Source of the DNA: Thalia democratica
Lineage: Eukaryota
Length of the DNA stretch: 64,000 bases
NCBI GenBank assembly: GCA_965202585.1
Contig: OZ241827.1
Coordinates: forward strand, 58,094,001-58,158,000
Direction: 5' to 3'
In this document: positions 1 through 27,500 of the stretch, piece by piece
How the letters are laid out: each line of letters starts with the position of its first letter
Numbering within the stretch: position 1 is the stretch's first letter
Made by a program: the position numbers and the translations under genes
Notes under the pieces: model-generated
Database searches by the model: none
Told to the model about the DNA's origin: nothing
Seen by the model: only the letters and a program-made list of their open reading frames with translations

Positions 1-1174
1 TGTTCATGCGTAACGCTTTTAATTGATTTATGTTTGCAGTTATCATGTTTTAAAATTCTCTAGCAAAAAGTTGAAGGGAAAATAAGCAGCGTTGTTATCA
101 ATTTACTTTTATTTTTTATCTTATTTGTGCTCTCTGTGCGCACATCAACAAAAAACGCAAACATGCAAACTGTTTAAAAAAAAAAGTAGTTGTTATCAGT
201 TTGCCGTTTACCAAACAAATAAGAGTGTTGCTGAAACAAAACAAAAACATTTCCTATTTTGTTCCGATCACGTTTTTGTGCCGAATTTCGCTGGAATTCG
301 TTAATTAAATTACCATGCTTAGTCATTTAAGTTTAACACAAACCTAAACACAAGGACGTACGTAAACAATCGGAAGGCAGTTTTTAAATTAAATAATTTG
401 ATTTTAATGATTAGAAGCATTAATTATTCGTCGTTAAACTCGCTGTTTTGACACATTTGGAACTTCCTTGAACCTACATGCAGATGTTCAACTAGAGTGA
501 AAAATTACAAAAAAAAAAAAATAAATGTATTGAGAAACGCTCTCACTTGTTTTGGCCCATAGTTAATACTGAATGGCTTAACATGCACCTTCTCAGTAAG
601 CAATTGTTGCGTCATAATGTTTGCACAAGAATTTAATTTCTGGCCACAGCTTTCTGAGAAGCTGTCTGGTGGGCGCAATTTGACACTGTTCCACATAATC
701 TCAGGGTAAAGGACAAAACACAAAGTGCTTGGTTGCCAAGCGACCAGGGGATTCGCTGACGTCTGAGAGACTTTAGAAAACAATTTGTGATGCGATTTGA
801 ATGGATTGTGATGTAATTTCGCCGTAATCTTTATCCCTCTCAAGCCCCCATTAAAACAAAAGCAGAGGAGATAAACGACAAAAGTGATGTTTACGACTGA
901 GGTCGGGTAAAGCTTCAGACATGCAGATTTCAAAGATTAAATTACTGGCGAAAGACAACAGTTGCTTCTCAATAAAGCAAGAGACCGGTTAAGACAGTTT
1001 TTATATTGAGCTTCTTCGCTTAAATCTTTCAAAACAGTTGTACTTGCATTAGCTTTTGAAAATCTTGTTTTTATATATAGTTTATGTTGTGAAGACTGTG
1101 CTTATAGTGATATGTGTCAAACATAAAACTTAACGTTACTTTAAACTAAGTTTCTATAATGTTCTCAACAGCTA

Positions 1175-1200
1175 TTAAGAGTGTTAAGAGTGTTAAGAGT
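1175..1200. repeat. Short tandem repeat (TTAAGAGTG) x ~3
   Basis: Read directly; no such array at the paired site in the right arm. Confidence 0.9.
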
Positions 1201-2986
1201 ATTTTTATATATATAAGTGTCTAAAAAAATCAAGAAAAATAATCTAATGAATACGAAGTTTTGAGATCTTTTGTAGATCATAAAGGTTTATTAATTAAAA
1301 GATATTTTACTAAATTAGTCTATACAAGCACTGTTAGAGAGTTCAACTTAAAACACTAACAGTTATATCAAAAATCAACTCAAAAAATTCCAAAAACATA
1401 TTCTTAACGAACCCTTTTCAGCCGTTAAAACTTTCTCAGAAAGAATTTAGCATTGCAAAATGATGACAAATAAATCATATCAAACTAGCTATTAGGGAGA
1501 GTTATCTCTACACGCTGTATGACATTAGAAACATGCCAGGCAGGCCACATAAAAGAAGGCTCAGCTGCGCAACCAATAACAAGCAGGCAGAGCTGCCTGT
1601 CAAGTAACAATATAGTGGACTCTTTGTTCTGCCATCTCGCTAAATAGCCGGTGCTTGTGACTGACGTTTGATTACGAGATAATTGTGTTGAATGGCGAAA
1701 GTGTTGAGAAACTATCAAGACGACGCAATCGGACGTCAAATACAAAGCAACAGTGTTTTGAGGACCAGAGGTCAGCCAAGGTGCAAGGCGACGCCGAATA
1801 TTTTTATCGAGGTCCGCGCTTTCATAGGACGGCTTAAATCGCTTGCTACATAAACACAAAAGTGCTACTGTTCGCAGCGAATTACCGTTGTGATACGAGG
1901 ATAACCATCAGAAACCTTACTAAACCCAAATCGCGCTCGAGCTCAAAATAAGATAAAAGCTGTCGAGTATTAAACAAACACTTCACAGCAGCGGTGGCCA
2001 CCTCATACAAAGTGAAACGTTTAAACGTGCAAAAGCGACGCCGAGCAAACTTTCAGCAGCAGAGAAAAAATTCGCTTTCTCTTTTCAATGTGTGTAAACG
2101 CTGCCTGCCCGAAAGAATGCTTCCAAGATAATCGATTAAAGTTGAACTTGAAGCTATTTGCTCGCCTCATGTTATGCCGCTATATATATATTTGTGTGCT
2201 AGGTGTGACTTTTATTAGAGCAAATCGGTGGACTTGGCCTCGATCTTAATATTGATATAGTGCTACAAAATTCGCATGGACTTTCACTGACCTGTTTTCC
2301 AGTTTTTCCAGATACTTTTAAGCCAAGTTTTTTATTTTCTCCTGGTAAACATAGAAGAGGAATTTAAAGTAAAAATACATATTGCTTTACTTTATAGAAA
2401 AAAAATTGTGGATTTGTAAAGCACTTTTAGAATACTTATAACCTGAAAACAACAATTTAAGTTAAGACTTTTTTCTTAATGTCTAAAAACACAAAAACAA
2501 AACACACAAAATTCAAGTACAGTTTTAACATTATGGCATACGTGCGTAATCAGTTCTAATGTAAATATTTACCAAAAGTTATTGATAAAAAAGGGTGAAA
2601 ATAGACGCTGGAAAAGTTTGATAAGTCATTCCACATTGGCAAAGAGTTTAACAGCCCGAAGTTTACATTACTGCGTAATGTATTTTTTGTATATATTTTT
2701 GTTAAGTAACGGTGAAATGTAAACTGTTGCGACGGCTTTGCAAGCAATTTGGTTGCCGTAAAAAGCGCTGAACAAAGTCTGCGGTGCTTTGTTTTGCATT
2801 CAAACGTGCGTATTTTGCATTGAATGAGCAGTCTTTGTTTTGGTGTTTATTCTCACTAAAAAGCAACAATAAACATTTGTGCTTTCTTTCAACCGTATTG
2901 TACTGAAACTTGTACACAAACTCTCAGCTACTTACTGTTATAAAACTTGGGAAAAGTCCCACGTGAATTAGTAATGAAGCACTTAC

Positions 2987-3052
2987 CAGCAGCAAGAGGA
3001 GGCAACAGCAGCAGTGATGTGTTTTCGTGTAAATACTCGCAACCCGAGTCAT
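2987..3052 (-). CDS. Duplicate exon 1 (signal peptide) of a head-to-head copy pointing out of the left window edge; functional paralog, partial duplicate or allelic copy unresolved
   Basis: Reverse complement of 2987-3052 is 66/66 identical to 21534-21599, with GTAAGT donor (2981-2986) and an upstream acceptor AG (3197-3198). Confidence 0.7.
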
Positions 3053-3912
3053 TCCAATTTATCAACTCAACTCTTCGTGATCGTCTCGTTGTTGTTGGCC
3101 ACTGCACAAATTTTATTCTCAGCAAAATATTTCAGCTTTCAGTTCAGATCGCTGTTAATCTCTTTTATTTCAAAAATTTAAATGACTACACGGCGTCTGA
3201 AACGTTGATAATAAAGCGGTTAATCTGTTAAATCGCGTGCGTTCATGACGGGCTATTTGAGACGCGAAGGCAATTAGTAAAAAATTATATAAAATATTTT
3301 ATTGTCCAATAAAAAACACTGCGGTGCCCTTTTTCGGTCATAAAACTTGTAATTAATATTTTCATTTGTTTTTATTACATTGTAAACCTTTAAATTATGT
3401 TTGCAACTAAAATAACAAAAACCAGTGTGTGACGGAATATTTCTTGAAAAACATAACCGCTATCACGAATTGTATTTATTTAACCATATTTTTATTTAGC
3501 ATATAAATAAAGTATAGCAATAAAATTATAAAAATAACATTGTTGAATTTACAGAAGTTTAAAAACAAAAGCTTAGTAAATAAACTCACAAAGTAAGTCT
3601 GCAATAACTTTTATTGATTTTCAAACAAAACAAATCTTAGCAACTGAGCTCTAAAATTTTTAGCTGCATTTCAAAATGTGATCTTAAAGTAAACTTTTTA
3701 ACAACTACTGTAAACAAAATCTAATAAAACAAAGCTCTGCATAAACAATCAAAGTGTTCTATTTAAAAAACACTTCAAACTTCACTTCAACAATGACTCT
3801 TTAACAGCTCACACACGTTAACAGATCTTATTAAAACTAATAAGCCTGCAGGTTGTCATACATTGCAGGCAAATTAAGCGCTCGTTTAATTAAAGTATAA
3901 AGTATAAACGCA

Positions 3913-3930
3913 CTACTACTACTACTACTA
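3913..3930. repeat. Microsatellite (CTA)6
   Basis: Read directly; interrupted version at about 20709-20723. Confidence 0.9.
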
Positions 3931-6900
3931 AGTGCTATACGGATGCCTTAATAACATCTCGAGCTGCTAAGCGCGTTTCTTTTACTTTGTTTTGAAAATT
4001 TCTCTCATTTTGTTTTTACCCCGAGCAGCGTTCTCTCGTTTTAGATTTGAGCTGACCGAAGCTCACTGCGTTTAATATATATTTAGCAAAAAATGTTTTT
4101 CTTTCGGTGCTAAGTAATTGCTGGTTGCTTTTTTGGCGTGACCACTTTGTTTTATCGCGGCTTTTGTACCTTTTAAGTTGAATGTAAACAAAAATGCAAA
4201 TTGTTTTGCTATCGCTGTATCTTTACGTATTAAAAACAAACAAATCTGACTTTCGTTTCAGAAAATTATCATTTTGTTTTTGGCTAAACAAGTACTGAAA
4301 AAAGTGTTTGAATATTTTAAATTTTTAAGTAAATAAAGTTTTACATTCAATCGTTTCGTTAAACTGAAACCACACAAACATTGAATAAAAAAAAAGTTGT
4401 TTATTGCTACATTCCGATTTTTTATCTATGAATTCTTTTAAAAGTACAATATACGTTTAAACTCACAAAATTTGAACTATAAAACGCTGTTTAGAGAATT
4501 ACTAGAACTAAATATCTACTTCAAAAGCTTAATATCTTACAAAAAAATTGAACCAATGTTTATTTGCTGTTGCAAATAAAAGTAATACTTTGAACTAATT
4601 GCTTTGACTGAAAGAGTATATGCACGATGCTAAAAATAAAATGCAATTTTTATTGTGCTGCTTTAATTCGGCATCTAGTTTTGATTTAAAACAATTTTCA
4701 TGTCTCCTGTTTATCAATGATTGTAATAAACAAGCAAACAAACTATACTCAAAATTTGATATTTAATACATTTTTTTTACTTCCTCATTGCATAAATTTC
4801 AAAATAATTAGCACGCTTTCAAGATTTCAACAGACACAATTAAAATTTTATTTCCATATAAAGCAGTATTGATCGAAAATTTTGAAACAAAAGAAAGTTT
4901 CTATTCAAGACACCAGGTTTACAAAATGCACCGAAATAATTAATTAAACATTTCAGACTGGAAAAATAATTTTAATGTGTCTGTAACGCGTTTGATATTT
5001 TGCTGAAACGACGGCATGACATTGACCTTATCACCAGCCTGTTTGACTAATTACCATTGAAATCCTCTTGAAATGCCATCGCTGATTAGCGACTTTCCGC
5101 AAAAATCATTCAGATTCACAACAACAACAGCAACAACAGCGTGTTTATGGATTTGCTGTTTCAGCGAGTGGCAATTTAAAACAATGGCCTCGTTTATTCG
5201 CCAATCTTAATAAACTGGAAATCTCGGCAACCGCCATGGTGAAAAATAGCAGACTGCCGCAACACCTGCAAAAAAAAAAGTTTGTTTGTCGAAACAACAA
5301 GAATTTAATCGCAGCACATGCTGCTCATGAAAGGGGGTTTTTCCCCGACCAAAAAGCGTTACTTTTGCCACCACCGGAGTGTCAGTCGCGCTAATGAGGC
5401 CTCTAATGCGCTTAAAACTGAGTAATTGGGTGGAAGCGGTGTGGAAGTTTGTAGAAATTAATTTCTAATTTGATTTGCAGCTCGTAACGACCTTCTACAG
5501 TTTCATATTCAGACGTCTGAATTTACAATACGCAAAGTTTCGTGTGAGTCAGCTTTGAAAAAGTTTAAAAATAAATGCAATTATAGTTGTTTGGTATTTA
5601 ACAAAAGTTGTATAACGTTTGCTCTTGAAAACTTTTGTTTATTAAGTGAATTTTTAAGAATATTTTTTTAAATTACAGTATAGTAATCTTTTTTATAATG
5701 GAGTTATTTTAAATTAGTTAAGAATGTTTAGTAATTGTGTTTTTAGAACTTTGAATAAATTAAAATATAAAAACAGCCTAGAGATACAAAGCTAAAAATT
5801 ATTCATTAAAACAGAAGGCTTTTGTTATAATGCACTTAATTACTTGTCTATATATATTATTATACTTGTAAATAGTAACATGCCTATATATAGTATATAA
5901 ACCTACAGTATATATGCTAGTTGACACTTTATTTGTACATAGTCTGTTTTTTCTCTGAAATATATTAAACCGCTAATTAGCTAATTGTGTTATTAAGATT
6001 TTATTGTAAGACAGTCTAATGAGCATCAATATTTTGTTTTAATTAATCTTGGACGATAAAAATGTTATATAAAATTTTCGGATAAACGTTTGAACCGTTA
6101 AATCTTTCTTTTATAATTGAAAAAAACAGTTATTGGAACGTTTTTTAATTAAAGACTTTTTTTCTATAATTTAAAGCTAAGCAGTCTAAATGTGTGAAAC
6201 TTTGAATTGTATTTAAATCAAACCATTACTTTGGTGTTTTACTTTAAATTGTTGTTTTCTTCATATTTATATAATTTTTTGTGTTACGAAATAAAAAATA
6301 AACTTTTTTGATTAATTTCAAAAAGTTAATAAGGTTAAATCAAATTTACAAATAAGAACTTTTCGGTCATTTAATTCTTTCACATTCACACAATAAAGTG
6401 TGTGAAATTTTAAAAGCACATATTGACAAATAAGATTAAATTTCTAACACCACTTGTATGCACAATTCAAATAAATTAGCAGTGATATAAGTGTCGTTTT
6501 TAATTTATTTAACTGTATTCCATTAAGTAAATAGTTCTGATACGTTTTAACAAAGCTATTTTCCACTAAGTTTATCTATTTGCATGATAAAAAGCTATGA
6601 ATAGATTTGAAAGCTGTAAATTTTATGTGTAAAACTTTATCTACGGCGGTTTTTGTGTTCAACAATGGCTTGCTTGTTCGATAAATTTTTATTTGCACTT
6701 GTAAAAAATAGTTTAGAGTTGTCAGTGCTTTATAATGATCATTAAATTATGAACGAAACCTAACGTAAACAGCATAATTTAATTTGTTTGTTCTAGCAAA
6801 TTATCCGAACTCGATCACTTAAGTACGAGCGGTTTTAGCTTTTAGTTTAAATAACATGTCAAACAAAGTTTTTTGAGCAATCTTGATGTGTTTAATGATA

Positions 6901-9900
6901 CTTGAAGATGTTTACAGCACTTTAATTAGGTGTCTGCACGCCAAAGTAAACGTGCAAATTTATAAGTTTAAAAAACACTGAATTAAAATATATAGTCAAA
7001 GGGAAACCAACGACTTTCAGAGAAATCAAAAACCACTAAAACAGCTGAAATTTCATACTTGTTTTTGTTGAATTCCATTAGAAAGTCTTATTCAGCACTG
7101 CCAGTGATATTTCGGGCATTATCTGGAATAATTGTTTGATTTAATTTAAAGATAAGGAAAGCGCTTCGTGAGTTGAACGTACGAAATCTTTGTCACACAT
7201 TCGTGCCTTTAAATGGCTTAAAGTTATAGGGTTTAAGACAATGGTCTTAATAAAGATGCTTGGCATTCTTATTGCCAGGCAGATAACTTGCTCTTAAAAT
7301 AATTTACATAGAAATCAAAAGCGTTTATTTAATTTGTACGGTGTTGTTGTCGCAAAAAGTTTTAGAATGGTGAAAATGTTGTATAGCTTATCTAGTAGGT
7401 TTGCTTTGAACAAAACTAGTTAAATGTGAGCTTTTAAAATTGCTAAAAATAGAACTTAATGAGTTTTTATAAACAGAAATGGAAATAACTTTTGCTATAT
7501 TTAGAAGTATATAGTAGTAGGAAAACAACAGTTTTAATCTTGTTAAAACTATACTAGCTAGTATTATAATTTGTGCACATGTTTATTTTGTTACCAAAAT
7601 ATTTTTTTTTACTACTTAAAAATGCTGTTTAAATTTTAAATATATAACCATAAGTAGTGAAAAAAGTAAAATGTTTGTAATAGAAATCAAAAACTGAAAT
7701 TGGTTTTCATTTTATGCAATACATTTTGTTTTAATTAGCAGTAATTGATTAAATAAAAACAAAACAAACACTATCTTAAGATCGTTTTTATGATAAAATC
7801 CAAACTGCTACTAAGTTGTAAAGAATCGAAATACTGAAAATTTTATTCTAGAAAGTAATAAAGCTTCAATAATTTAAAACTTCAAGCTAATAAACTCTTC
7901 TCACAGTAAAAAGATTAAAACAATTAAAAACTTTCTTAAAACTTGTCTTTAAAAACAATACAAATATTGTGATTAAAATTTCCAGTATTACAATATTATT
8001 TGAAATTTAAATAAAGAATACAAATATTTTATAGTACACATGAGCTTTTATCTTAGATTTTTTGTTTATTTTTTAAACAAACTTGAGTTTTTAAGGTAAT
8101 TACGTGACAAAACAATAAGGTAAAAAATTGATTAGCTTTTAATAAGAACTTAAATACTTTTATTTATTTATAGATTATAATGTTGTTTACAACCTTTCAA
8201 TTCAAAAATGAAAGTAATTGTTATTGCTTATTAGTTTGATAACAACAACATTTAAAGAAAAAAATTTTTTAAAAGTAGTTTAAATCGCTTAAATCTAATT
8301 TGTGCTAAATAAAGCTTTATAATAGACTTTTTGTCTTTAGATAATAAAATGTATTATATTAAGTTTTTTTGCTTAAATGTAACTAAAGTAGTTTTACTGT
8401 AAAACTTTTTATAAAGGTTTTTGGTTTGAATGAGACTAAATTTTTAATATTTTTATTGTTTTATGCTTGCATTTATCCTAATTAACAGGTTTCGAACAAA
8501 TCTATTCTTATTTAAAAGAAGAACTTACAATTTTTTTTCTCAACTTATATTTATTTAACAGTTTGAATTTTTACAAGCTCAACTTTAGAAACATACTTAT
8601 TGGTTAATCAAGCAAGTTTTAAGTTGTGCTGTACCAACAAAAGAACTGTGTAAGAAATTTTTAAAATTTTGCAAAAAAAAAAAACAATTTTTATCGACTA
8701 ACAAACAAACAAAACTTTCGTTTTTGAAAGACCTTAACAATAAAAAAAGTTTTTTATTTCTTTTTATCAAGAATCTTTACAATAAGTTATGAAAATGAAA
8801 AACTTTTCTTAAAATTAAATTATTTTTAAATGTTATGTAGTATGTTATGTTATATACATTTATAGCCAAACAACAGTTTACCAAGTGTTTTATTTAAAAA
8901 ACTTAGTTCAAATAAAATTAAGTTTGTGTTTTAAAACTGCAATCTACTAGAAAAAGTAGAACTTTTTTTTTAACTATTACTGTATTTTAAATTTTACAAT
9001 AACTTTGTAGAAAATATTAGAAGGAATGGTTTTAATAAAACACTGTTTTTGTATATTGTGTAAAGCTGTTGTGAACTTTGAAACAGTTTTTTCAAAAAAT
9101 CTTAAATGATATAGAAAGTTATTTGTTTGAAAAAATCTAAACAACAAGAAAAGTGTTTTTAACATTATAAAAAAGCTTACAAGTAATAGGTACTGTAAAA
9201 CAAAAATTTAAACACAAGAAACAATGAACAAAACAAATAGTGTCAGATAACGGAAGTTAAACATTACTCTTGAAGGTTTTGAAATCAGAATGCAAATAAG
9301 TTTCAGAAATTTAATTGTATCGTTTCTTTATTTGATAGTTTTTAAATCGTTATAATAAACAATTTTAAAGTAATTAATACTATCGGTCAGTGCTTTTATT
9401 ATTATTAAGTTTATTGTCCAACGAAGGACTTAGGCATTAAAACCTAAGCCACTTAAACTGAAGGAAATTAACATAAAAAGAAATAAAAACAAATTAAAGT
9501 GATTAAATAAACATAAACATAAAGCTTATACAAGACACAAACTGAATAAATTAAAACTTTCACAACCAAAATATTCAACAATTCCAAAGTCACCAATCTC
9601 CAATTATACATTCCAAAGCAACAAATCCCTGTAACAAGCATCTCCTGTCAAAATTCTTCAGAACCTGTCTTCATCTTGCAGAACATTGATCTCAGCTACT
9701 ATTTGCCATTCGTCATGTTTTCAAAGTTTCACCACGGCAAATTCAGTTAAAAATCACTTCAAAAATGTGGCAGCAACAATTCACAAATCTAGCTTAGGAA
9801 TCAACTGAGTATCCAATAATTTCAAAATCTAAAGCCCCAAGCACATAAACAATAGACCTTCCAAAAAATCAAAATTGAAAAGTACCTAAAACCTACAAGG

Positions 9901-9994
9901 GGAAGGTGTAGCTTACAGATTAAACTACCAATAAACTACATACCACACATCAAATCAATGGCTAAAGAGATGAACAAAACTAATTACTTATAAA

Positions 9995-15000: not shown

Positions 15001-18000
15001 AAATGCCTACCGGTCCCTGACTTTCTGTTTATTGAGTTAATTTTTAGTAAAACTATTCACTGAGCTTATTACTAATAGCAGAAGCATTCAATAAACAAAA
15101 GTATTTCATGATTCTAAGAACTTTTGTCGACATTTTATTCTTTCACTCTATTTTTACACCATCAGTTCATCCAACGATGACGTAAACGAGGTTTATTACT
15201 TTGTAACAAACGAAACGATTTCAAGCAGCTTTTACTTGAGTCATCTTAAAAAGCTGTAAATATTCCACGAAATATTATCTACACATAACTTTAACAGATA
15301 TATTTATGATCAGTGCGTTTTACTTTATTTTATCAAGTTCACAATTATTCCAAAACTGCAACAATGTTTATTATATTGATTATCTAAAATGAAAATATTT
15401 ACCTTTTAAATCAAGTCAAATTGATTTAAAAACCTTTTTTATTTTACGAAATTAACTATTTCTAAAAATTTATGTAGAAATTTATTTTTAAACGTACAAG
15501 AGTGTTTATTAATTAGAAGCAACTCAAAGAATTGAATTTAAAAATTTTAACTACTGATATCTGCATAAACACAAATGAAAAAAAATTAAGTATGTTTGAG
15601 GTTACGTCTAATATGAATTAAGACTAAAAATAAACTACTTTTGCTCATTATTATTGTGATTTATACTTTGAATAAGAACTCCGAGTTCTTTGAAGTATGA
15701 CTTCATAACCAAAATGTTTTTTCGTACACCGGGTCTTTAGACAAAACTTTTTGAGCGCTTTTTTGTCGTAAACCATTAAAAATAGTTAAAGGTGCTTGTA
15801 ATAATATTTTAATAAATTAAACGGTTAAAATCTAATCTAATTCAATACAATAGTTCTTGAAAATAGTATTTTTTCGGCACTGCACAACAAAAGTGCAGAA
15901 CAAATACTTTTTGTATATCTTTGAGAAAACTACAACAAAATTAATTGAGCAGTTATTCAGAATTCTTTATTTATGCAATCCTGGCAATCCTGCTACTCAA
16001 ATTATTTTTTATCAAAAAGCTACCTTAACAAAAAGCTATACAGGATACACCGTTTATAGATTGACAATTAGAGGCTTTTGCGGTTACGACTGACTGAAGA
16101 GACTAGAAATGAAACTCGAGTATCAGTCTACCGAGAGCTTGTAATTTGATGACATAAGTGGTATGACCAATCCTTTACGTTAATTTTATAAAAAAGAATT
16201 AGAAATATACTAAATAAGGTTATTATAAAGTAAGGTTAAGTTTTGATTTTACATTAATCATATTTAAATAATCTAGCTTAAAATTTATACTTATGCTTAA
16301 TAATTTGTTATTTTATTCTGTTTTTTAAACTAATCGATTTTTTCAAATTTTATATAAAATTTTAGTTATACTAAAATAGGTTTTGCATTTGATAAATCAA
16401 CTTATAAAAACTTTGCTAAATTTCGTATTAGTACATGTAATATAACAACAAAGTACTTAAACATACAAAAACAGTTAATTTATTGTGTAAAAATAATAAG
16501 ATTCTACAAAGGAAAAATTATTTAATTAAAAACAAGATGAATTGTCAAAGTTGGAATGCTGAAAGCTAAACAACAATGACAGTACTTGTGTTTTTCAAGT
16601 AATTACCTTTAAAATTCAAGTATTTGTTTTCAAATCAACAAAAAAAGTCTTAAAATAAGATCTCATGTGGTTTATCTTAGTGCAGAAAAACCACCTAAAA
16701 CTTAAAATCTTAAAAATCTTCGTATTTTTTATTTAAATTTTAAATGATATTGTAGTATTGGCAATTTCAATCACAATATATGTATTAACTTTTTTTTAAT
16801 GTTTTATCATTTTGCTTTCAAGGTAGTTTATTAGATTCAAGTCTTAAATTGTTAAGGTTTTAATTACTTTAATGAATAAAATTTTCAGTGTTTGTATACT
16901 TCACAGTTTAAAGAATTTTGGATTATGTCTTAAAAACGACCTTAAGGTACTATTCATTCTATTTTTATTTACTTATTTACTAAATAAAATGTATTGGATA
17001 AACTGAAAATTATTTTTAGATTTTGATTTCTACAACAACTATTTTACTTTTTTCACTACTAATAGTTTATAAATTTAAAATTTAAAAAGAACTTTAAATA
17101 AAAAAAACTATTTAATTTCGTAACAAAAGAAATATGAATAAAAATTTAAAAATTAACTTGTAAAATTGAAGGTTAAATTTTTTGTCTTTTTACTACTATA
17201 TACTTTTCAGCATACTAAAGATTATCTTTATTATCTTTAATAAAAACATAATTTAGTTATAATTCCATCAGCTTTAAAAGCCCACAACTATATTTAGCCA
17301 AAATTGGCCAAAGCAAACCTACTAGATAAGTTATACAACATTTTCACCATTCTAAAACTTTTTGCGACAACAACACCGTACAAATTAAATAAACGCTTTT
17401 GATTTCTATATAAATTATTTTAAGAGCAAGTTATCTGCCTGGCAATAAGAATGCCAAGCATCTTTATTAAGATCATTGTCTTAAACCCTATAATTTTAAG
17501 CCATTTAAAGGCACGAATGTGTGACAAAGATTTCGTACGTTCAACTCACGAGGCGCTTTCCTTATCTTTAGATTAAATCAAACAATTATTCCAGATATTG
17601 CCCGAAATAACGCTGGTAGTGCTGAAAATCACTTTTCTATGAAAACCAAAAAAAATCAGCCGTTTTAGTTGTTTCTGATTTCTCTTAAAGTCGTTGGTTT
17701 CCCTTTGACTATGTGTTTTAAATCAGTGTTTTTTAAACTTATAAATTCGCACGTTTACTTTGGCGTGCAGACACCTAATTAAATTGCTGTAAACATCTTC
17801 AAGTATCATTAAACACATCGAGATTGCTCAAAAAACTTTGTTTGACATTGTTATGACTTTGTTATATAAACTAAAAGCTAAAACCGCTCGTACTTAAGTG
17901 ATCGAGTTCGGATAATTTGCTAGAATAAACAAATTAAATTATGCTGTTTACGTTAGGTTTCGATCATAATTTAATGATTATTATAAAGCACTGACAAATC

Positions 18001-19364
18001 TAAACTATTTTTCACAAGTGCGAATAAAAATTTATCGAACAAGCAAGCCATTGTTGAACGCAAAAACCGCCGTAGATAAAGTTTTACACATAAAATTTAC
18101 AGCTTTCAAATTTATACATAGCTTTTTATCATGCAAATAGATAAACTTAGTGGAATATAGCCTTGTTAAAACGTATCAGAACTATTTACTTAATGGAATA
18201 AAGTTAAATAAATAAAAACGACACATATGTCACTGCTAATTTTATTTGAATTGTGCATACAAGTGGTGTTATAAATTTAATCTTATTTGTCAATATGTGC
18301 TTTTAAAATTCCACACACTTTATTGTGTGAGTGTGAAAGAATTAAATGACCGAAAAGTTCTTATTTGTAAATTTCATATAACCATATTAACTTTTTGAAA
18401 TTAATCAAAAAAGTTTTTTTTTTTTTTTCGTAACACAAAAAATTATATAAATATGAAGAAAACAATAATTTAAAGTAAAATAACAAAGTAATAGTTTGAT
18501 TTAATTACAATTCAAAGTTTCACACATTTAGACTGCTTAGCTTTAAATTATAGGAAAAAAGTCTTTAATTAGAAAACGTTCCAATAACTGTTTTTTCAAT
18601 TAAAAAAGAAAGATTTAACGGTTAAAACGTTTATCCGAAAATTTTATATAACATTTTTATTCTCTAAGATAAATTAAAAAAATATATTGATGCTCATTAG
18701 ACTATCTTACAATAAAATCTTAATAACACAATTAGCTAATTAGCAATTTAATGCTTTTCATAAAAAACAGACTATGCACAAATAAAGTGTCAATTAGCAT
18801 ATATACTGTAGGTTTATATGCTATATATAGGCATGTTACCATTTACAAGTATACTCGTATATAGATAAGTAATTATGTGCATAATAACAAAAGCCTTCTG
18901 TTCTAATAAATAATTTTCAGGTTTGTATCTATAGGCTGTTTTTATATTTTAGTTTATTCAAAGTTCTAAAAAACAATTATTAAACATTCTTAACTAATTT
19001 AAAATAACTCTATCATAAAAAAAAGATTTCTATACTGTAAATAAAAAAAAGTTAAAAAAAAATTCACTTAATAAACAAAAGTTTTTAAGAGCAAAAGTTG
19101 TACAACTTTAAATACCAAACAACTCTAATTGCATTTCTATTTAAATTTTGTCAAAGCTGACTCACACGAAACTTTGCATATTGTGGGAGTTCAGACGTCT
19201 GAATATGAAACTGTAGAAGGTCGTTACGAGCTGCAAATCAAATCAGAAATTAATTCCTACTAACTTCCGCACCGCCTTCACCAAATTCCTCAGTTTTAAG
19301 CGCATTAGAGGCCTCGTTAGTGCGACTGAGACTCCGATGGTGGCAAAAATAACGGTTTTTGGTC

Positions 19365-19378
19365 GGGGGAAAATCCCC
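19365..19378 (+). promoter_or_regulatory. kappaB/Rel-like site GGGGGAAAATCCCC about 2.1 kb upstream of ATG
   Basis: Partner at 5333-5346 reads GGGGGTTTTTCCCC; the G-run and C-run are retained in both arms. Confidence 0.35.
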
Positions 19379-21533
19379 TTTCATGAGCAGCATGTGCCGC
19401 GATTAAATTCTTGTTGTTTCGACAAACAAACTTTTTTTTTCGCAGGTGTTGCGGCAGTCTGCTATTTTTCGCCATGGTGGTTGCAGAGGTTTCCAGTTTA
19501 TTCAGATGGCGAATAAACGAGGCCATTGTTTCAACTTTCCACGTGCTGAAACATAAATTCCATAAACATGCTGTTGTTGTGAGTCTAATAAATTTTGCGG
19601 AAAGTCGCTAACCCCGATGGCATTTTGAGAGGATTTCAACGGTAATTAGTCGAACAGGCTGGTGATAAGGTCAACTTCATGCCGTCGATTCAGCGAAATA
19701 TCGAACGCGTTACAGACACATTAAAATGATTTTTCCAGTCTGAAATGTTTGATTAATTATTTCGGTGCGTTTTGTAAACCTGGTCTGGAATAGAAACTTT
19801 CTTTTGTTTCGAAATTTGCGTTTTTTCGATCAATACTGCTTTATAAGGAAATAAAATTCAATTGTGTCTGTTGAAATCTTAAAAGCGTGCTAATTATTTT
19901 AATCATTTAAGCAATGAGGAAGTAAAAAATAAGTATAAAGTTTCAAGTTTTGAGTAAAATTTCTTTGTTTGTTTATTACAATCATTATTAAACAAGCAGA
20001 CATGAAAATGCTTTTAAACCAAAACTGATTGTTCAATTAAAGCAGATTAAAAAAAATTGCATTTTATTTTTAGCAGTGCGTATATGTTCTTTCAATTAAA
20101 GCAATTAATTCAAAGTATTAATTTTACTAGCAATGTCAACTCGAAACTGCTTTATTTTTTTTAAGCTATTGGGCTTTGAAGTCAATATTTAGTTATAGTA
20201 ATTCTCTAAACAGCGTTTTATAGTTCAAGTTTTGTGAGTTTAAACGTGTATTGTACTTTTAAAAGAATTCATAGATCAAAAATTGGAATAGAGCAATAAA
20301 CAACTTTTTTTATTCAATGTTTGTGACATTTTTTCAGTACTTGTTTAGCCAAAAACAAAACGATAATTTTCTGAAACGAAAGTCAATCTCTGTTATTTGT
20401 TTTTAATACGTAAAGATACAGCGATAGAAAAACAATTTGACTTTTTTTTTTACAGTCAACTTCAAAGGTACAAAAGCCGCAATAAAACAAAGTGGTCACG
20501 ACAAAAAAAAAGCAACCAGCAATTAATTAGCAACGAAAGAAAAACATTTTTCGCTAAATATTTATTAAACACACTGAGCTTCGGTCAGCTCAAATTTAAA
20601 ACGAGAGAACGCTGCTCGGCGTAAAAACAAAATGAGAGAAATTTTCAAACAAAGTAAAAGAAACGCTCTTAGCAGCTCGAGATGTTATTAAGGCATCCGT
20701 ATAGCGCGTAGCAGTAGTAATAGTGCGTTTATACTTTGTACTTTAATGAAACGAGCGCTTAATTGCCTGCAATGTATGACAACCTGCAGGCTATTAGTTT
20801 TAATAGAATCTGTTAACGTGTGTGAGCTGTTAAAGAGTCTTTGCTTGAAGTGTTTTTTAAATAGAACACTTTGGTTTTTTATGCAGAACTTTGTTAGATA
20901 TTAAGTTATTAAACAGTTTACTTTAAGATCACGTTTTGAATTGCAGCTAAAAGTTTTAGAGCTTGGTTGCTAACATTTGTTTTGTTTGAAAATCAATAAA
21001 AGTTTCTGCAGACTTACTTTGTGAGTTTATTTACTTACTTTTTGTTTTTAAACTTCTGTAAATTCAACAATGATTTTTTAATAAATTTATTGCTATACTT
21101 TATTTATATGCTAAATAAAAATAAGGATAAATAAATACGGTTCGTGATAACGGTTATGTTTTTCAAGAAACATTTCTTCACACTCTGTTTTTTTTATTTT
21201 AGTTGCAAACATTATTTCAAGGTTTACAATGTAATAAAAACAAATTAAAATATTAATTTTATGTTTTATGACCGCAACACGGGTCACCGCAGTATTTTTT
21301 TATGGACAATAAAATTTTCATCATTGTTTATTAATTGCCTTCGCGTCCCAGATAGCCCGTAATAAACACACTAACTATTAATTTTACAGACGCCGTGTAA
21401 TCATTTAAACTTTTGAAATAAAAGAGATTAACAGCGATCTGAACTGAAAGCTGAAATAATTTGCTGAGAATAAAATTTGTGCAGTAGAAAAACACAAAGA
21501 GAAGAACTGGAAGAATTGAGTTGATAAATTGGA

Positions 21534-21599
21534 ATGACTCGGGTTGCGAGTATTTACACGAAAACACATCACTGCTGCTGTTGCCTCCTCTTGCTGCTG
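21534..21599 (+). CDS. ADAMTSL1/3: Exon 1 coding part, signal peptide [22 protein letters not shown]
   Basis: ATG 21534, 22 codons, strong phase-0 donor GTAAGT at 21600. Joins phase-0 exon 2 to give ...[14 protein letters not shown]|EEF, a signal-peptide-like sequence. No other hydrophobic ATG exon noticed between here and exon 2. Confidence 0.8.
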
Positions 21600-24500
21600 G
21601 TAAGTGCTTCATTACTAATTCACGTGGGACTTTTCCCAAGTTTTATAACAGTAAGTAGCTGAGAGTTTGTGTGCAAGTTTCAGCACAATACGGTTGAAAG
21701 AAAGCACAAATGTTTATTGTTGCTTTTTTACTGAGAATAAACACCAAAATAAAGGTAGCTCATTCAATGCAAAACAAAGCACTGCAGACTTTGTTCAGTG
21801 AGGTTTTTACGGCAGCCAATTTGCTTTCAAAGCCGTCGCAAAAATTTACATTGCACCGTTATTTAACAAAAACATATACAAAAAATAATCACTAATGTGT
21901 ACAGCCGTCTCTAAAACTCTCCGCCAATGTGGAATGACTTATCAAACTTTTCCAGCGTCTATTTTTACCCTTTTGTAACGATTACTTTTGGTAAATATTT
22001 ACATTAAAATTGATTACGCACGTATGCCATAATGTTAAAACTGTACTTTAAATTTATTGATGTGTGGGTTTTTGCGTTTTTTAGACATATGAGACAAAAG
22101 TTTCAACTTAAATTGTTATTTTTAGGCTTCAAAAAAAGAAATGCTTTATAAAATTCATAAACTTATTTTTATAACTTGTAATTTTTAACAACATGTTTTC
22201 TACTTTAAATTCCTGTCTAAATTTATCAGAACAAATTGAATAATTCAGCTTAAAAATAGCTAAAAATTGGAAAAAGGGTTAATTAAAGTCCACACGAATT
22301 GTGTAGCGCTAGATTAATAACATAAAACGAGGCTAAGTCCATCGATTTGCACTAATAAAAGTCACATCTAGCACATAAATATATATACAGCGGCATAACA
22401 TGAGGCGAGCAAGTAGCTTCAAGTTCAACTTTAATCGATTATCTTGCAAGCATTCTTTCGGGCAGGCAGCATTTACACACACATTGAAAAGAGAAAGCAA
22501 AAGTTTTTCTCTGCTGCTGAAAGTTTGCTCGGCGTCGCTTTTGCACGTTTGATCGTTTCACTTTATATGAGGTGGCCACCGCTGCTGTGAGGTGTTTGTT
22601 TAATACTCGACAGCTTTTATCTTGTTTTGAGCTCGAGCGCGATTTGAATTTAGTTAGTTTTTCTGATGGTTATCCTCGTATCACAACGGTAATCCGCTGC
22701 GAACAGTAGCACTTTTGTGTTTATGTAGCTAGCAAGTTAAGCCTTCCTATCAGAGCGCGGCCCTCAATAAAAATATTCGGCGTCGCCTTGCACCCTGGCT
22801 GACCTCTGGTCCTCAAGAAACTGTTGCTTTGTGTTTGACGTCCGCTTGCGTTGTCTTTATAGTTTCTCAACACAATCGCCATTCAACACAATTATCTCGT
22901 AATCAAACGTCAGTCTTAGGCACCGGCTACTCGGCGAGATGGCAGAACAAAGAGTCCATTATCTTGTTACTTGACAGGCAGCTCTGCCTGCTTGTTATTG
23001 GTTGCGCAGCTGAGCCTTTTTCATGTGGCCTGTCTGGCTTGTTTCTAATTTCATACAATTGTAGAGATAACTCTGCCTAGTAGCTAGTTTTATTATTTGG
23101 AATCACTTTGCAATGCTAACACTTTTCTGAGAACTTTTCTTTTCAGCTGAGTAAGGAATGTGTTAAAAATGTGTCTATTAATGCTTTTTGAATTGTTTCT
23201 TTATATATTTTGTAAGAGCTTAACTTAAACTATGTTATAGTTTTTGTTAACCTTAACAAAACATTAACAGCTTAATTAACTTTTATCCTTGGAAAAAAAA
23301 ACTTAACACTTGTTGTCCATTAAGAAGTTTATCTAGAATATTTTTGATAATTTAAGAGTATACTTTATTAAACGATAAAAAAGTGCTAAAAAATTTGGTC
23401 CAAGGACTTTGTGTACGAAAAAAAACTTTCGGTTATCGATAAAAGATAAAAGAGTAAGCAGCTACTTTATGTATACATATCTTAAAGTGTGTATGATTTT
23501 TTTAATGAGTAATTTTGATAACCACTAAAATTACTTGAAAGTAACCAAAGTCATTTTAATCACTCTGTTTAACTATTAAGAATATTGTAGAAGCTTAGCC
23601 TAAAGTTAAATTAAGGTTTGTTTTTTACACACATCACTATAAACATTTCTTTACAATAAAAACTATATATAATGACAATATGCTTAAAAGCTTATGCAAG
23701 TACAACTGTTTTGATTGATTTAAGCAAACAAGCTCAATATAAAAACTGTCTTAACCTGTCTCTTGCTTTATTGAAGCGACTGTTGTTTTTTACCTGTAAT
23801 TATTCTCTGAAATCTGCATGTCTAAAGCTTTTCCCGACTTCAATCGCAAACACCAACTTTTGTCGTTTATCTCTTCTGCTTTTGTTTTAATGGGGACTTG
23901 AGCGGGATAAAGATTACGGTGAAATTACATCACAATCCATTCAAATCGCATCACAAATTGCTCTCTAAAGTCTCTCAGACGTCAGCAAATCCCCTGGTCG
24001 CTTGGCAACCAAGCGCTTTGTGTTTGTGCCCTTTACCCTGAAATTATGTAAAACAGTGTCATATTGAGCCCACCGGACAGCTTCTCAGAAAGCTGTGGCC
24101 AGAAATTAAATTCTTGTGCAAACATTATGACGCAACAATTGCTTACTGAGAAGGTGCATGTTAAGCCGTTTAATGTTAAGAGTGGGTCGAAACAAGTGAG
24201 AGCGTTTCTCAATACATTCCGTTCGTTTTTGGTAATTTTTTACTCGCGTTGAACCTCCACACTAAGGTTCAAGAAAGCTCCAAATCCGTCAAAACAGTGA
24301 ACTTAACGGCGAATAATTGATGCTTCTAATCATTAAAATCAAATTATTCAATCTAAAAACTGTATTTCACGTGTTTATGTTTGTGTTAATCTTAAACGAC
24401 TAAGCATGGCAAATTGATTAACGAATTCCAGCAACAGTCGACACAAAAACGTGATCGGAACAAAATAGGAAACGTTTTTGTTTTGTTTCAGCAAAACTCT

Positions 24501-27500
24501 TATTTGTTTTGTAAACAGAAAACTGATAACAACAACTTTTTTTTAAACAGTTTGCATGTTTGCGTTTTTTGTTGATGTGCGTACAAACAGCACAAATAAG
24601 ATAAAAATAAAAGTAAATTGATAACAACGCTGCTTATTTTCCTTTCAACTTTTTGCTGAAGAATTTTAAAACATGATAACTGCAAAGATAAATCAATTAA
24701 AAGCGTTAAGCATGAACAATGTCGAAGTTTTTTTTTGTATCAAACGTAAACATCAAATCTTTATTCCTGCCTTTGGTGGCTTTTGTGGCTGATAAAGTTT
24801 GGTTTTAGTACTTTGGGTTAAGCTTTGGTTTTGCATTAAAAAAAAAGTCAGATTTAATATTATATAAACAATGTTTTTTTCTAATCAGTAAATCATTTAG
24901 AACTAATTTCTAACATATACACAGGTCTTAATTAAAAAATGAAGCCTGAAAGTGGCATGTTTTGAAACAATTTTTATCAAAATCATATTAAAGTATACAC
25001 ACATAAATAATTTATAAGCAGTTTGAACTTTATAATCTGCTGCTATAAAGATGTGTTATGCAATAAATTCATTTTACAGTTTAGTTTATTCATGTTAAAT
25101 TTGCTGCAAACATTTTGACGTGTTTCAAAATAACTTATAAAAAATAGCTAGCTACTCATCCACATTCTTTTTATTGTAGTAAATTCGCTTATAAGTATTA
25201 ATAATATTAGCAATTTTTATAAACATATAGGCTAGGAACAATTAAACAATACAAGTGAATTTGTAAGTTAAGAAAAAAAACAAAGAAATTTTGCATACAA
25301 AACTAAAAGTAATTTAAAAACTTCAGGTTAAGAAAAACATTCATTTCATAAATAAAAGTATACTATAAGTTTTTTTGGAACATCTATATATAGACAAACT
25401 TATTTTTAACAACTAGGATCAATAAAAGAACACATGAGATAAATAAGAAAAGTACATGAATAATTAAGAGCTGTTTTAAAGGAAGTTTCGATTTCTGTTA
25501 ATACATTTCTCACATTTGCTTAGCTCTGTATAAACTTTAATATTTAAAAGTTACAGCTTTAAGAAACTTAAAACCACTAAAGCAATTAAAAGTTCAATTA
25601 AACTGTTAGGGTTAACTTTACTAGGTTTTAATTAGATTCTTTTGTCATAAATGTTGTAAAACAAGTTATTGGAGTTAAAGTTAAACATTTTAATGTTAGT
25701 GTTATTTTAAATTACAGCCAGGAAGTTTTAGTTTGTATTAAACTCTAAAACAAATTTTACATAAATTTTCAAAATTTATACCTTTATAATTGAACTTTGT
25801 AGAAGTAAATAGAAAATAATTGTATTCCCAATTCAAATGTTTTAAAATTCAAAACACACTTAAATGCTACAAAACAGTTTATAACAGGATACCACAAAAA
25901 TATTTGTTACCTTAATTCCAACTGGTTTCAGACATTTTAAATTATAGTATACAGTTACACAGTATACCCTTTTACCTCTCTGAAGCATTTCATAACAAAT
26001 TTATCACTTAAATATACTCTTTTTTCAACTTTTGCGCATCTTTGTTAAAATCAAATTCGTTACTTCAATAAAAAAGTTCGTTACAAAGCTTCATTTCTTC
26101 TTGCACGACGAAAAACCGATCATGTAATATGTCTTTTTCCATAAAAAAAAGCACACACAGATAGAAATATTCAAAGTATTTGATTGTGTTGATTTTTATT
26201 GAGGCCGTAGTATCTCGCTCACAAAAGAGAAATTGCCAGGTTAAACTGATGTAAAGGAGCCCATTGTGCTCAGCTGACTTGTTTTGCAGTTTGAACGTTA
26301 ATACAGCGAAACACGTGCAATAAGTGAGCATCTTTTCAGTTATTTCATTGCTCAAAATTCAAGCTTGCCTACTGCGGGTTGAATGGCAAAAACAAACGCA
26401 TAACACACGAATTAAATATAAACACAAATAAAGGTTTAACACAAATAAATAAACAGATTAAACACAAATAAACGTTATTTGAATGCAATTTTTTTTTTGC
26501 TGAGAAATGAAAACAGAAGCTTTATATTTTAACGGCTTTTGTCCCAACAACTTGTTTGCTTTAAGGCTTAAACAGGTACCAAGTAAACACTTAAATACGA
26601 ATGAAACTGCTCAGGTGACAAAAACACAAAAAAAAAAACCAGCTGTTAAAAATTTAGCCTAGTAAAAAAAGCACAATGAAACAAAAAACTTCTTTATTTT
26701 TAGCACCGCGCATTCATCCCACGCTTTTTGTTTACGGCGCGCGCTTTATAATCAAAATTGAATTTTTTTCTGGTCAAAAACCATTCACTCCGTGATACTC
26801 GACCTTCGAATGCTTCCGTTCGCGGCAAGTTCATGGCTCAAATTTCTAATTTTAGTTTAAAATTTAGCAGCATTAGAAGCAGTGGCCTGTCAAGGCACGC
26901 GCGCAATTTTAGTTGATTTATTTTTACTTTTTTTTTAGGTATAACTTTGTTCAGGATTTTTGCCATGCTGCGGATTTCGCTTAATCCCGAGTTCATGCTT
27001 ATCATTTTGTTGGCTTTCTCTTGAAAATTTTGATTTTCTTTTAGTTTTACTAGTGGATAAACAGCTAAAAAATCGTAAACTACAATATAAACTTAAGAGT
27101 ATTTTAATATTTACCGTTTAGACGCTTTTTAGGGAAAAACATTATATTATTCATTGTTTGCACTCACATGAATTTTACTTCAAGTGTTGAAACAACTCAA
27201 AGCTATTACTTTGTCAATTAACCTCAATTAAAGAAAGTCTTTCTTTGGAAACACATCAGCTTCAAAGCTACCTAGGACGCCTGATGTTTACAAAAAAGCA
27301 GTTTGGCAGCTAATTACGCTGAAATTTGCAGTGAAATCGTGTTATTAGCACCGCGCAAGTCAGCCAAGGTCATCAGATCTTATTTACAATTACGTTCCTC
27401 AGTGATTAAATCAGCGAGCGACCTACTAACTCTTTCTCATCATCTCATCACTTCAACCGCTTCAACTTTCTTGTGCTACTTTGCTACTTTATTTCGAAAC

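What the first reader, a model, noticed from the sequence alone, without database searches (positions are those of the whole stretch)
1..24718. Giant inverted duplication placing two Punctin 5' ends head-to-head
Seen: two arms of about 8 kb or more are colinear (paired coordinates sum to about 24,590-24,720 throughout) around an ~8.5 kb unique spacer. Each arm carries about 5 kb upstream DNA, an identical signal-peptide exon and proximal intron 1, pointing outward. Identity is patchy (about 97% in islands, about 70% or unalignable between), which looks like selection on regulatory islands. Inference: either a divergent pair of ADAMTSL paralogs sharing a central region, or a promoter plus signal-peptide cassette copied onto another gene left of the window. 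Alternative: two highly divergent haplotypes mis-joined by the assembler.
Basis: partly seen in the sequence, partly recalled or inferred. Interest (0 to 1): 0.8.

Follow-up and report, generated by a model that had tools for sequence, protein, structure and literature searches.

The report
Head-to-head ADAMTS-like gene pair duplication
A planktonic marine animal's chromosome carries a real, old mirror-image duplication that sets two active promoters and identical signal-peptide first exons of ADAMTS-like (punctin-type) matrix genes back to back about 18 kb apart; this is a common way for gene families to grow, not a new mechanism.

Summary
Window 1-8030 and 16713-24718 are colinear inverted copies, 86-87% identical by BLAST and 88.6% without gaps. 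Weak homology runs on to 8330/16345. The unique spacer is about 8 kb, and the left arm runs off the window edge.

Each arm carries the same 66-nt first exon ([22 protein letters not shown]), at 3052-2987 on the minus strand and 21534-21599 on the plus strand. Both point outward. The exon lies inside the longest perfect match between the arms, 157 nt.

Public RNA-like contigs cover only this exon and its 5'UTR. They stop exactly at the predicted donor and continue into an ADAMTS-like exon 2 that differs from the window's own exon 2. One contig matches the left arm's private 5'UTR with no differences, so the left promoter is active and feeds a second ADAMTS-like gene left of the window.

Contig depth, wild metagenome contigs and earlier unchecked scan notes point to a multi-copy ADAMTS-like array. 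This locus looks like one head-to-head junction in it.

A haplotype mis-join is unlikely but not formally excluded. There are no Ns, the boundaries are fuzzy, and left-arm-specific DNA occurs in two other samples.

Divergence is truly patchy, but most low-identity patches are indel or repeat patches. Selection on islands is supported only around exon 1.

The scan has found similar head-to-head pairs elsewhere in this genome. Ordinary kind, low interest.

The parts
1..8030 (.). Left arm of the inverted duplication. It is cut by the window start, and weak homology continues to about 8330.
   Evidence: colinear with 24718-16713 at 86-89% identity.
16713..24718 (.). Right arm of the inverted duplication. 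Weak homology starts at about 16345. The right-hand end at 24718 is set only by the window start on the other arm.
8331..16344 (.). Unique AT-rich spacer (22-28% GC). It holds a degenerate retrotransposon-like tail at about 9984-10694 (-) and a small inverted-repeat element at 11285-12119. No conserved coding sequence was seen.
   Evidence: The reverse-transcriptase reading is by eye only; Pfam gave no hit.
2987..3052 (-). Left copy of coding exon 1 (22 codons, [22 protein letters not shown]), with a GTAAGT donor directly after 2987.
   Evidence: Exact match. RNA-like contigs end their fit at 2983/2987 and continue into an exon-2 sequence.
21534..21599 (+). Right copy of coding exon 1, identical to the left copy. 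The donor GTAAGT is at 21600, and a second in-frame GTAAGT is at 21651.
2914..3070 (-). Left half of the 157-nt perfect-identity block: 18 nt of 5'UTR, exon 1 and 73 nt of intron 1.
   Evidence: this is the longest perfect run, against an expected longest of about 38 nt.
21516..21672 (+). Right half of the 157-nt perfect-identity block.
3053..3175 (-). Left-arm 5'UTR, with arm-specific letters at 3080-3157. The transcript start lies near 3160-3175.
   Evidence: X18 record 14 covers 3050-3157 with 0 differences, and X14 record 9 reaches 3175.
21411..21533 (+). Right-arm 5'UTR, mirror of the left one. An AT-rich TATA-like ATAAAAG lies just upstream.
   Evidence: for the sequence. X18 record 15 carries the right-arm/consensus letters.
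30101..30202 (+). Exon 2 of the right-hand gene ([18 protein letters not shown]...). It completes the signal peptide, with predicted cleavage after VKA.
   Evidence: acceptor AG at 30099-30100 and donor GTAAGA at 30203. Homologous exon 2 ORFs occur in wild contigs.
30643..30737 (+). Exon 3, the first thrombospondin type 1 repeat.
   Evidence: Pfam TSP_1 at E=2e-06; reading frame.
32036..64000 (+). Rest of the right-hand ADAMTS-like gene: Cys-rich exon, TSP1_ADAMTS repeats and I-set Ig domains. It runs off the window end.
23350..23551 (.). Right-arm-only insertion (119 + 58 nt) that causes the worst-aligning patch. It is a small dispersed repeat.
   Evidence: for the indel. Tara contig L004:84-167 matches 23439-23356 at 79%.

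Best explanation
This is a genuine, fairly old inverted segmental duplication, with Jukes-Cantor distance of about 0.12 in alignable non-coding DNA. It places two ADAMTS-like (punctin/papilin-type) genes head to head. Each arm keeps its own promoter, its 5'UTR and a 66-nt first exon. That exon encodes the first 22 residues of the signal peptide and is spliced in phase 0 to an acidic exon 2 and then to the first TSP1 repeat. The right-hand gene occupies 21.5-64 kb of the window. The left-hand exon 1 is transcribed leftwards and is spliced to a paralogous exon 2 that lies outside the window. Shown here: the two arms, the identical exon, transcription of the left-arm-specific 5'UTR, use of the predicted donor, and its junction to an ADAMTS-like exon 2 that differs from the window's copy. 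Inferred: that the left gene is a complete mirror copy, and that the pair is one junction of a larger array of ADAMTS-like units. The perfect 157-nt block at exon 1 is kept by purifying selection, by arm-to-arm or family-wide gene conversion, or by both. The rest of the arms drift nearly neutrally and pick up indels and small repeats.
For: The arms are colinear and inverted, 86-89% identical, and are the only repeat in the window. Exon 1 is identical in both arms and points outward, and it sits in the longest perfect run, 157 nt against about 38 expected. In one search the RNA-like runs X18 and X14 cover only 2902-3303 of the 6 kb laid. X18 record 11 and X14 record 9 stop at 2983/2987, which is the predicted donor. 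They continue with letters that read ILVKADEFVTS, against [11 protein letters not shown] at window 30101 (2 of 34 nt differ). X18 record 14 equals the left-arm 5'UTR over 108 nt with 0 differences. Only one path leaves exon 1 downstream in X18, so left-arm transcripts must take it. The domains are those of an ADAMTS-like protein: TSP_1, TSP1_ADAMTS and I-set, and the Cys-rich exon matches the N-terminal regions of papilin/ADAMTSL-like proteins. There is no HExxH motif between exon 1 and the first TSP1. Several results point to many copies. The X3 contig over 2838-3070 has depth 650 against about 65-170 elsewhere. In X1 at 3097, the left-arm letter has depth about 71 against 376 for the other letter. 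At least three further diverged exon-2 regions occur in Tara Oceans DNA. Left-arm-specific contigs in the inner arm, where the arms are only 69-77% alike, occur in X1 (7423-7766 and 7916-8111, depth 144-146) and in X3 (7828-8055, depth 172). As leads only, earlier scan notes place punctin/ADAMTSL features 25 kb to 430 kb left of the window.
Against: The DNA left of the window could not be read, so the mirror gene body was not seen directly. Unitigs cannot link the left-arm 5'UTR to a particular exon 2 across the 157-nt block shared by the paralogues, so that link rests on there being a single downstream path in X18. The 2-nt difference in exon 2 could be polymorphism, because X18 comes from another sample. 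The kind of run X18 represents is not on record; RNA is inferred from its coverage pattern. Polymorphism in this species looks very high: spacer and inner-arm contigs differ from the reference by 5-8%. That narrows the gap between allelic and arm-to-arm divergence. No long read spanning arm, spacer and arm was available.
Confidence: 0.8

Rival explanations
1. Assembly artefact: two very divergent haplotypes of one locus were joined in inverted orientation, so the real genome has only one arm and one gene.
For: The species appears extremely polymorphic. X1 and X3 contigs differ from the reference by 5-8% even in the spacer and the inner arm, and median arm-to-arm divergence is only about 8%.
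Against: The window has no N or gap. An 8-kb unique spacer lies between the arms, and arm identity fades gradually (77%, then 69%) instead of stopping at a sharp junction. Both arm types occur in two further DNA samples. Left-arm-specific inner-arm contigs have about twice the depth of allele-specific contigs (144-172 against 47-70). More than two sequence variants cover single positions, for example 8 contigs at 5222. Several diverged copies exist in wild DNA.
Confidence: 0.07
2. Partial duplication only: the 5' region (promoter, exon 1 and perhaps a few exons) was copied in inverted orientation and now drives a truncated or non-functional transcript, or a short relic, left of the window.
For: Only the first 8 kb of the left copy is visible. 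The arm is cut by the window, so its true length is unknown.
Against: The left-type 5'UTR is expressed at a depth like the other variants, 16.5 against 13.5. Exon-1 transcripts in X18 run at least 274 nt beyond exon 1 in one contig (record 11, 367 nt). Identity is still 95% at the window edge. An unchecked scan note places a punctin internal exon 25.2 kb left of the window, close to the mirror position of the matching note at 48.3 kb in this window.
Confidence: 0.09
3. Promoter plus signal-peptide cassette captured by an unrelated gene to the left (exon shuffling).
For: A 22-codon signal-peptide exon in phase 0 is a portable module, and the left downstream exons were not seen in genomic DNA.
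Against: The only downstream continuation of exon 1 in the organism's RNA-like contigs is an ADAMTS-like exon 2 (ILVKADEFVTS), 94% identical to the window's exon 2. The left arm also keeps 3 kb of homologous intron 1.
Confidence: 0.04

Closest known systems
Head-to-head inverted gene duplicates ('duplogs') in animal genomes (Ezawa et al. 2011, PMC3194840; Katju and Lynch 2003 as cited there)
   Same: These are linked multi-exon paralogues created in inverted orientation with a spacer. In that survey, inverted events make up 20-50% of intrachromosomal duplicates, with head-to-head and tail-to-tail about equally common.
   Different: There is nothing essential. Here the pair seems to lie inside a larger array of the same gene, and only the 5' 8 kb of one copy is visible.
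Large palindromic segmental duplications with arm-to-arm gene conversion (human Y palindromes, Rozen et al. 2003 as cited in PMC3194840; mouse chr12 SD12A1, PMC13688818)
   Same: Two inverted arms flank a unique spacer, each arm carries genes, and local tracts of very high identity are compatible with conversion.
   Different: Y-type palindromes keep arms more than 99.9% identical (from my own knowledge). Here overall identity is 88.6%, and only short tracts such as the 157-nt exon-1 block are identical, so any homogenisation is local.
Punctin/MADD-4, ADAMTSL1 and ADAMTSL3 (ADAMTS-like proteins; PMC6920096)
   Same: These are secreted proteins with multiple thrombospondin repeats and immunoglobulin domains and no protease domain.
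   Different: Orthology to punctin, as opposed to papilin or other ADAMTS-like proteins, was not tested. C. elegans has one madd-4 gene and vertebrates have two punctin genes, whereas this genome appears to hold many copies.
Other inverted duplications noted in the same genome (Rh ammonium-transporter pair, followed up earlier; Islet, gremlin and CCP pairs, unchecked)
   Same: These are head-to-head intact gene pairs on inverted arms, with exons more alike than the surrounding DNA.
   Different: They involve a different gene family. The Rh arms were reported about 10% diverged in introns, similar to the divergence here.

Membership tests
ADAMTS-like (ADAMTSL/punctin/papilin-type) secreted proteins | N-terminal signal peptide | tested here: met
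   Exon 1 plus exon 2 read [27 protein letters not shown]|EEF. The hydrophobic core reaches a 9-residue Kyte-Doolittle mean of 3.9, with V at -3 and A at -1. The exon 1-exon 2 junction is seen in RNA-like contigs. No dedicated signal-peptide predictor was available.
ADAMTS-like (ADAMTSL/punctin/papilin-type) secreted proteins | Thrombospondin type 1 repeats, including the ADAMTS-type repeats | tested here: met
   Pfam gives TSP_1 at E=2e-06 and TSP1_ADAMTS at E=5e-10, 1e-10 and 6e-06, all above the curated cut-offs.
ADAMTS-like (ADAMTSL/punctin/papilin-type) secreted proteins | ADAMTS cysteine-rich domain and spacer after the first TSP1 | tested here: inconclusive
   ADAMTS_CR_3 scores 18.3 bits, below the cut-off of 21. 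The exon at 32036-32296 has no Pfam hit. It does match, at E about 1e-4, the region just after the first TSP1 of papilin/ADAMTSL-like proteins P0007, P0008 and P0010. The spacer was not examined.
ADAMTS-like (ADAMTSL/punctin/papilin-type) secreted proteins | No metalloprotease or disintegrin domain | tested here: met
   Exon 1 is spliced directly to exon 2 in RNA-like contigs. No HExxH motif occurs in any plus-strand frame between 21600 and 30600.
ADAMTS-like (ADAMTSL/punctin/papilin-type) secreted proteins | Immunoglobulin domains and C-terminal PLAC (punctin subtype) | tested here: inconclusive
   Three I-set matches are above the cut-off. The gene runs off the window at 64000, so PLAC cannot be checked.
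Inverted (palindromic) segmental duplication with a head-to-head gene pair | Two colinear arms in inverted orientation around a unique spacer, beyond chance | tested here: met
Inverted (palindromic) segmental duplication with a head-to-head gene pair | Each arm carries a functional gene copy | tested here: inconclusive
   Both arms carry the promoter and exon 1, and the left-specific 5'UTR is transcribed and spliced. The body of the left gene lies outside the window.
Inverted (palindromic) segmental duplication with a head-to-head gene pair | Structure exists in the organism and is not an assembly artefact | tested here: inconclusive
   There are no Ns and the boundaries are fuzzy. Left-arm-specific contigs occur in two other samples at roughly double the allele-specific depth. 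No spanning long read was available and there is no calibrated single-copy depth.
Y-type palindrome kept homogeneous by gene conversion | Arm-to-arm identity above 99% | tested here: not met
   Identity is 88.6% overall, and only short tracts are identical.
Bidirectional promoter pair | Divergent transcription starts within about 1 kb that share one promoter | tested here: not met
   The two ATG codons are 18,482 nt apart (3052 and 21534), and each arm has its own duplicated promoter.

The most novel reading that the evidence does not exclude
This locus may be one fold of a roughly 0.5-Mb array of eight or more ADAMTS-like units. In that reading, the array was built by alternating head-to-head and tail-to-tail palindromic duplications, a germline amplification resembling breakage-fusion-bridge or template switching. 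The promoter-proximal signal-peptide exon, a 157-nt block present in about 4-6 or more copies, would be held identical across the whole array by concerted evolution while the gene bodies diverge.
Probability: 0.2. Interest if true: 0.45.

Novelty: new member of a known kind. Interest (0 to 1): 0.22.

Why it matters
Annotators should therefore expect two, and probably many, ADAMTS-like genes here rather than one gene plus an artefact. It adds another case to a genome that seems rich in inverted gene-pair duplications. It also flags an unusual expansion of a synapse- and matrix-organiser family that is single-copy in C. elegans and has two members in vertebrates. It does not reveal a new mechanism.

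Tried and rejected
1. I tried to read the left-hand gene through annotated proteins. A whole-library phmmer search with the Cys-rich exon found only an exon-sized Tara fragment at 95% identity, one repetitive 2,646-aa protein at 23% identity, and otherwise weak distant matches (E of 3e-09 or worse). None was a full-length protein of this genome, so this genome's proteins are not in the collections.

2. Tara contig L001 looked like an 87% paralogue. Alignment showed it is a hairpin-chimeric contig of a single variant, with the exon about 96% and the intron about 70% identical to the window. It says nothing about the left copy.

3. A search with the ORF antisense to exon 1 found nothing. An exact 30-mer across the exon-1 donor found nothing in JGI metagenome contigs. 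I therefore could not test whether the 157-nt block is conserved in more distant paralogues, which leaves selection and conversion unresolved.

4. Rfam and tRNA scans found nothing at the mirror position, or anywhere else in the window. So it gives no help in extending the arms.

5. A look-up of earlier findings by sequence with the internal exon at 48.3 kb came back blank, which by the operators' note means nothing.

6. The 115-124-aa ORF shared by both arms (1485-1859 minus, 22733-23077 plus) is rejected as coding. By eye, the two translations differ at about as many residues as neutral drift at the local DNA divergence would give.

7. The reverse-transcriptase reading of 10398-10694 has no Pfam support.

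8. The first impression that the differing letters in X1 and X3 show right-arm reads replacing the left arm is rejected. The list is biased towards sites where contigs from both arms add up.
Full report
**Observation**

The window is 64 kb, 71% A+T and has no N. A self-BLAST finds only one repeat at E<1e-10. It consists of three colinear minus-strand matches: 1-1187/24718-23556, 1364-4303/23207-20329 and 4373-8030/20325-16713. They are 86-87% identical, with coordinate sums of 24719, 24571 and 24698.

The repeat finder gives 40 inverted pairs with the same geometry. A global alignment of the arms is 88.6% identical in ungapped columns. A more permissive BLAST extends 69% homology to 8330/16345. 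The unique spacer is therefore about 8.0-8.7 kb and its edges fade rather than break. The left arm begins at window base 1 at 95% identity, so the arms are at least 8 kb and are cut by the window.

**What the arms carry**

On the right arm, plus strand, an ATG at 21534 opens 22 codons ([22 protein letters not shown]), followed by GTAAGT at 21600. The same 66 nt lie on the minus strand at 3052-2987. Both copies point outward, and the two ATGs are 18,482 nt apart.

The exon sits in the longest perfect run between the arms, 157 nt (2914-3070 and 21516-21672). The expected longest run is about 38 nt at the arm-wide identity. The block holds 18 nt of 5'UTR, the exon and 73 nt of intron, including a second in-frame GTAAGT at 21651.

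Downstream on the right, an acceptor at 30100 opens exon 2 (30101-30202, [18 protein letters not shown]...). This completes a signal peptide with a VKA cleavage motif. Exon 3 (30643-30737) is the first TSP1 repeat.

Further exons match TSP1_ADAMTS and I-set Ig domains, all above the Pfam cut-offs. A weak ADAMTS Cys-rich match is also present. The Cys-rich exon finds the N-terminal regions of papilin/ADAMTSL-like proteins. No HExxH motif lies between exon 1 and the first TSP1. The right-hand gene is therefore an ADAMTS-like protein without a protease domain. Whether it is orthologous to punctin specifically was not tested.

**Transcription**

I laid four public runs on 2500-8500. X18 belongs to the same organism label as the best DNA holders. 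X14 is a marine metatranscriptome. Apart from three short spurious matches of 20-25 nt, these two runs cover only 2902-3303, that is exon 1 and its 5'UTR. For X18 this pattern implies RNA, although its library type is not on record.

X18 record 11 (367 nt) and X14 record 9 (349 nt) stop fitting at 2983/2987, which is exactly the mirrored donor. Their loose ends, read on the minus strand, give ILVKADEFVTS. This is homologous to the window's exon 2 ([11 protein letters not shown]) and differs at 2 of 34 nt. So exon 1 is real, the first donor is used, and it joins an ADAMTS-like exon 2 that is not the window's own copy.

X18 record 14 equals the left arm over 3050-3157 with no difference, across a stretch where the arms differ at about a dozen positions. 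The left promoter is therefore active. Record 15 carries the right-arm letters, and records 12 and 13 show a third 5'UTR variant.

Only one contig leaves exon 1 downstream in X18, so the left-type transcripts must take that path. This argues against a cassette captured by an unrelated gene. The caveat is that the 157-nt block is shared among copies. Short-read unitigs therefore cannot tie one 5'UTR to one exon 2, and the 2-nt difference could be polymorphism.

**Copy number and the wider family**

In the DNA runs, the contig over 2838-3070 has depth 650 in X3, against about 65-170 for other contigs. In X1 at 3097, the left-arm letter has depth about 71 against 376 for the alternative letter, carried by three contigs. 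Up to 8 contigs carry the alternative letter at a single site. The exon-1 region, and much of the upstream arm, thus exists in several copies genome-wide.

A search with the exon-2 ORF found four genomic variants in ENA marine metagenome assemblies, several of them from Tara Oceans (ILVKADDF, ILVKSDDF, ILVKADEV, IVVKGDEI). Their contigs align to window 28.8-31.6 kb at 73-80% identity and to one another at 72-97% (74-88% between the lineages). So at least three more diverged copies exist in wild DNA.

Earlier notes of this scan are unchecked leads. They place punctin/ADAMTSL features 25, 105, 122, 155, 184, 219, 276, 347, 360, 377, 408 and 428 kb left of the window, including a tail-to-tail palindrome and tandem units of about 54-58 kb. 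That fits a whole-gene mirror copy.

**Artefact or real?**

Several points argue against a haplotype mis-join:
- There is no gap or N.
- A unique 8-kb spacer separates the arms.
- Identity decays gradually towards the spacer, to 77% and then 69%.
- Both arm types are present in two other samples.
- Left-arm-specific contigs lie in the inner arm, where the arms are too different to be confused. In X1 they have depth 144-146 (7423-7766 and 7916-8111). In X3 the depth is 172 (7828-8055). That is about twice the 47-70 seen for contigs that look allele-specific.

Two points argue in its favour. The species is very polymorphic, with contigs 5-8% from the reference even in the spacer. I also had no spanning long reads or calibrated depth. 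I put the artefact reading at about 7%.

**Patchy identity**

Mismatches per 100 nt are 7.25 times over-dispersed (P=4e-73). The median is about 8 and the tail reaches 39. Divergence falls with G+C content (rho = -0.33).

Most of the arm is 90-97% identical. The worst patch (1128-1433) coincides with a right-arm-only insertion at 23350-23551. A Tara contig shows that insertion to be a small dispersed repeat. Other patches go with indels, and the last 600 nt fade into the spacer.

Only the exon-1 block stands out beyond expectation. Selection and local gene conversion both explain it, and I could not separate them.

**Comparison with the known**

Inverted, head-to-head duplicates are common. 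They make up 20-50% of intrachromosomal multi-exon duplicates in six animals, with head-to-head and tail-to-tail about equal (PMC3194840). Palindromic segmental duplications with spacers are well described (PMC13688818). Punctin/MADD-4 and its vertebrate relatives ADAMTSL1 and ADAMTSL3 are ADAMTS-like proteins with thrombospondin and Ig domains (PMC6920096). The same scan has already followed up a comparable head-to-head Rh gene pair in this genome and judged it a well-known kind of locus.

**Verdict**

The paralogue-pair reading is supported, and the regulatory-island reading is not shown. The structure is a new member of a known kind, of low interest. The one mildly unusual feature is the apparent size of the ADAMTS-like array and the strict conservation of its first exon.

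Noticed in passing
window 21600 and 21651 (mirror on the left arm at about 2986 and 2935): Two in-frame GTAAGT donors lie 51 nt apart inside the perfectly conserved block. The RNA contigs use the first. Use of the second would add 17 residues ([17 protein letters not shown]) to the signal peptide.
   Followed up: partly
window 23350-23551; L004:84-167: The right-arm-only insertion of about 180 nt is a small dispersed repeat. It is also found next to exon 2 of another ADAMTS-like copy in a wild metagenome contig, at 79% identity.
   Followed up: partly
window 11285-12119: A short inverted-repeat element lies in the spacer. Its arms are 11467-11583 and 11877-11991, 79% alike. It looks like a MITE or foldback element.
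   Followed up: no
window 9984-10694 (-): A chain of short ORFs resembles by eye the C-terminal tail of a non-LTR retrotransposon ORF2. Pfam gave no hit.
   Followed up: partly
window 3046-3079 (X18 records 12 and 13): A third 5'UTR variant joined to the same exon 1 appears in the RNA-like run. It is neither the left nor the right type, which implies at least one more expressed paralogue sharing this exon.
   Followed up: no
L001 (Tara Oceans contig, 642 nt): This metagenome contig is a hairpin chimera. Its first 145 nt are the reverse complement of its own exon copy further on.
   Followed up: yes
window 48294-48608 (+): An ORF with a signal-peptide-like start ([23 protein letters not shown]...) lies inside the gene. 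Another first-stage note reads it as an internal first exon. It was not examined here.
   Followed up: no
window 2500-8500: Contigs of two other samples differ from the reference by 5-8% even in single-copy-looking DNA. This suggests very high polymorphism, or that organisms A and B are distinct populations.
   Followed up: no
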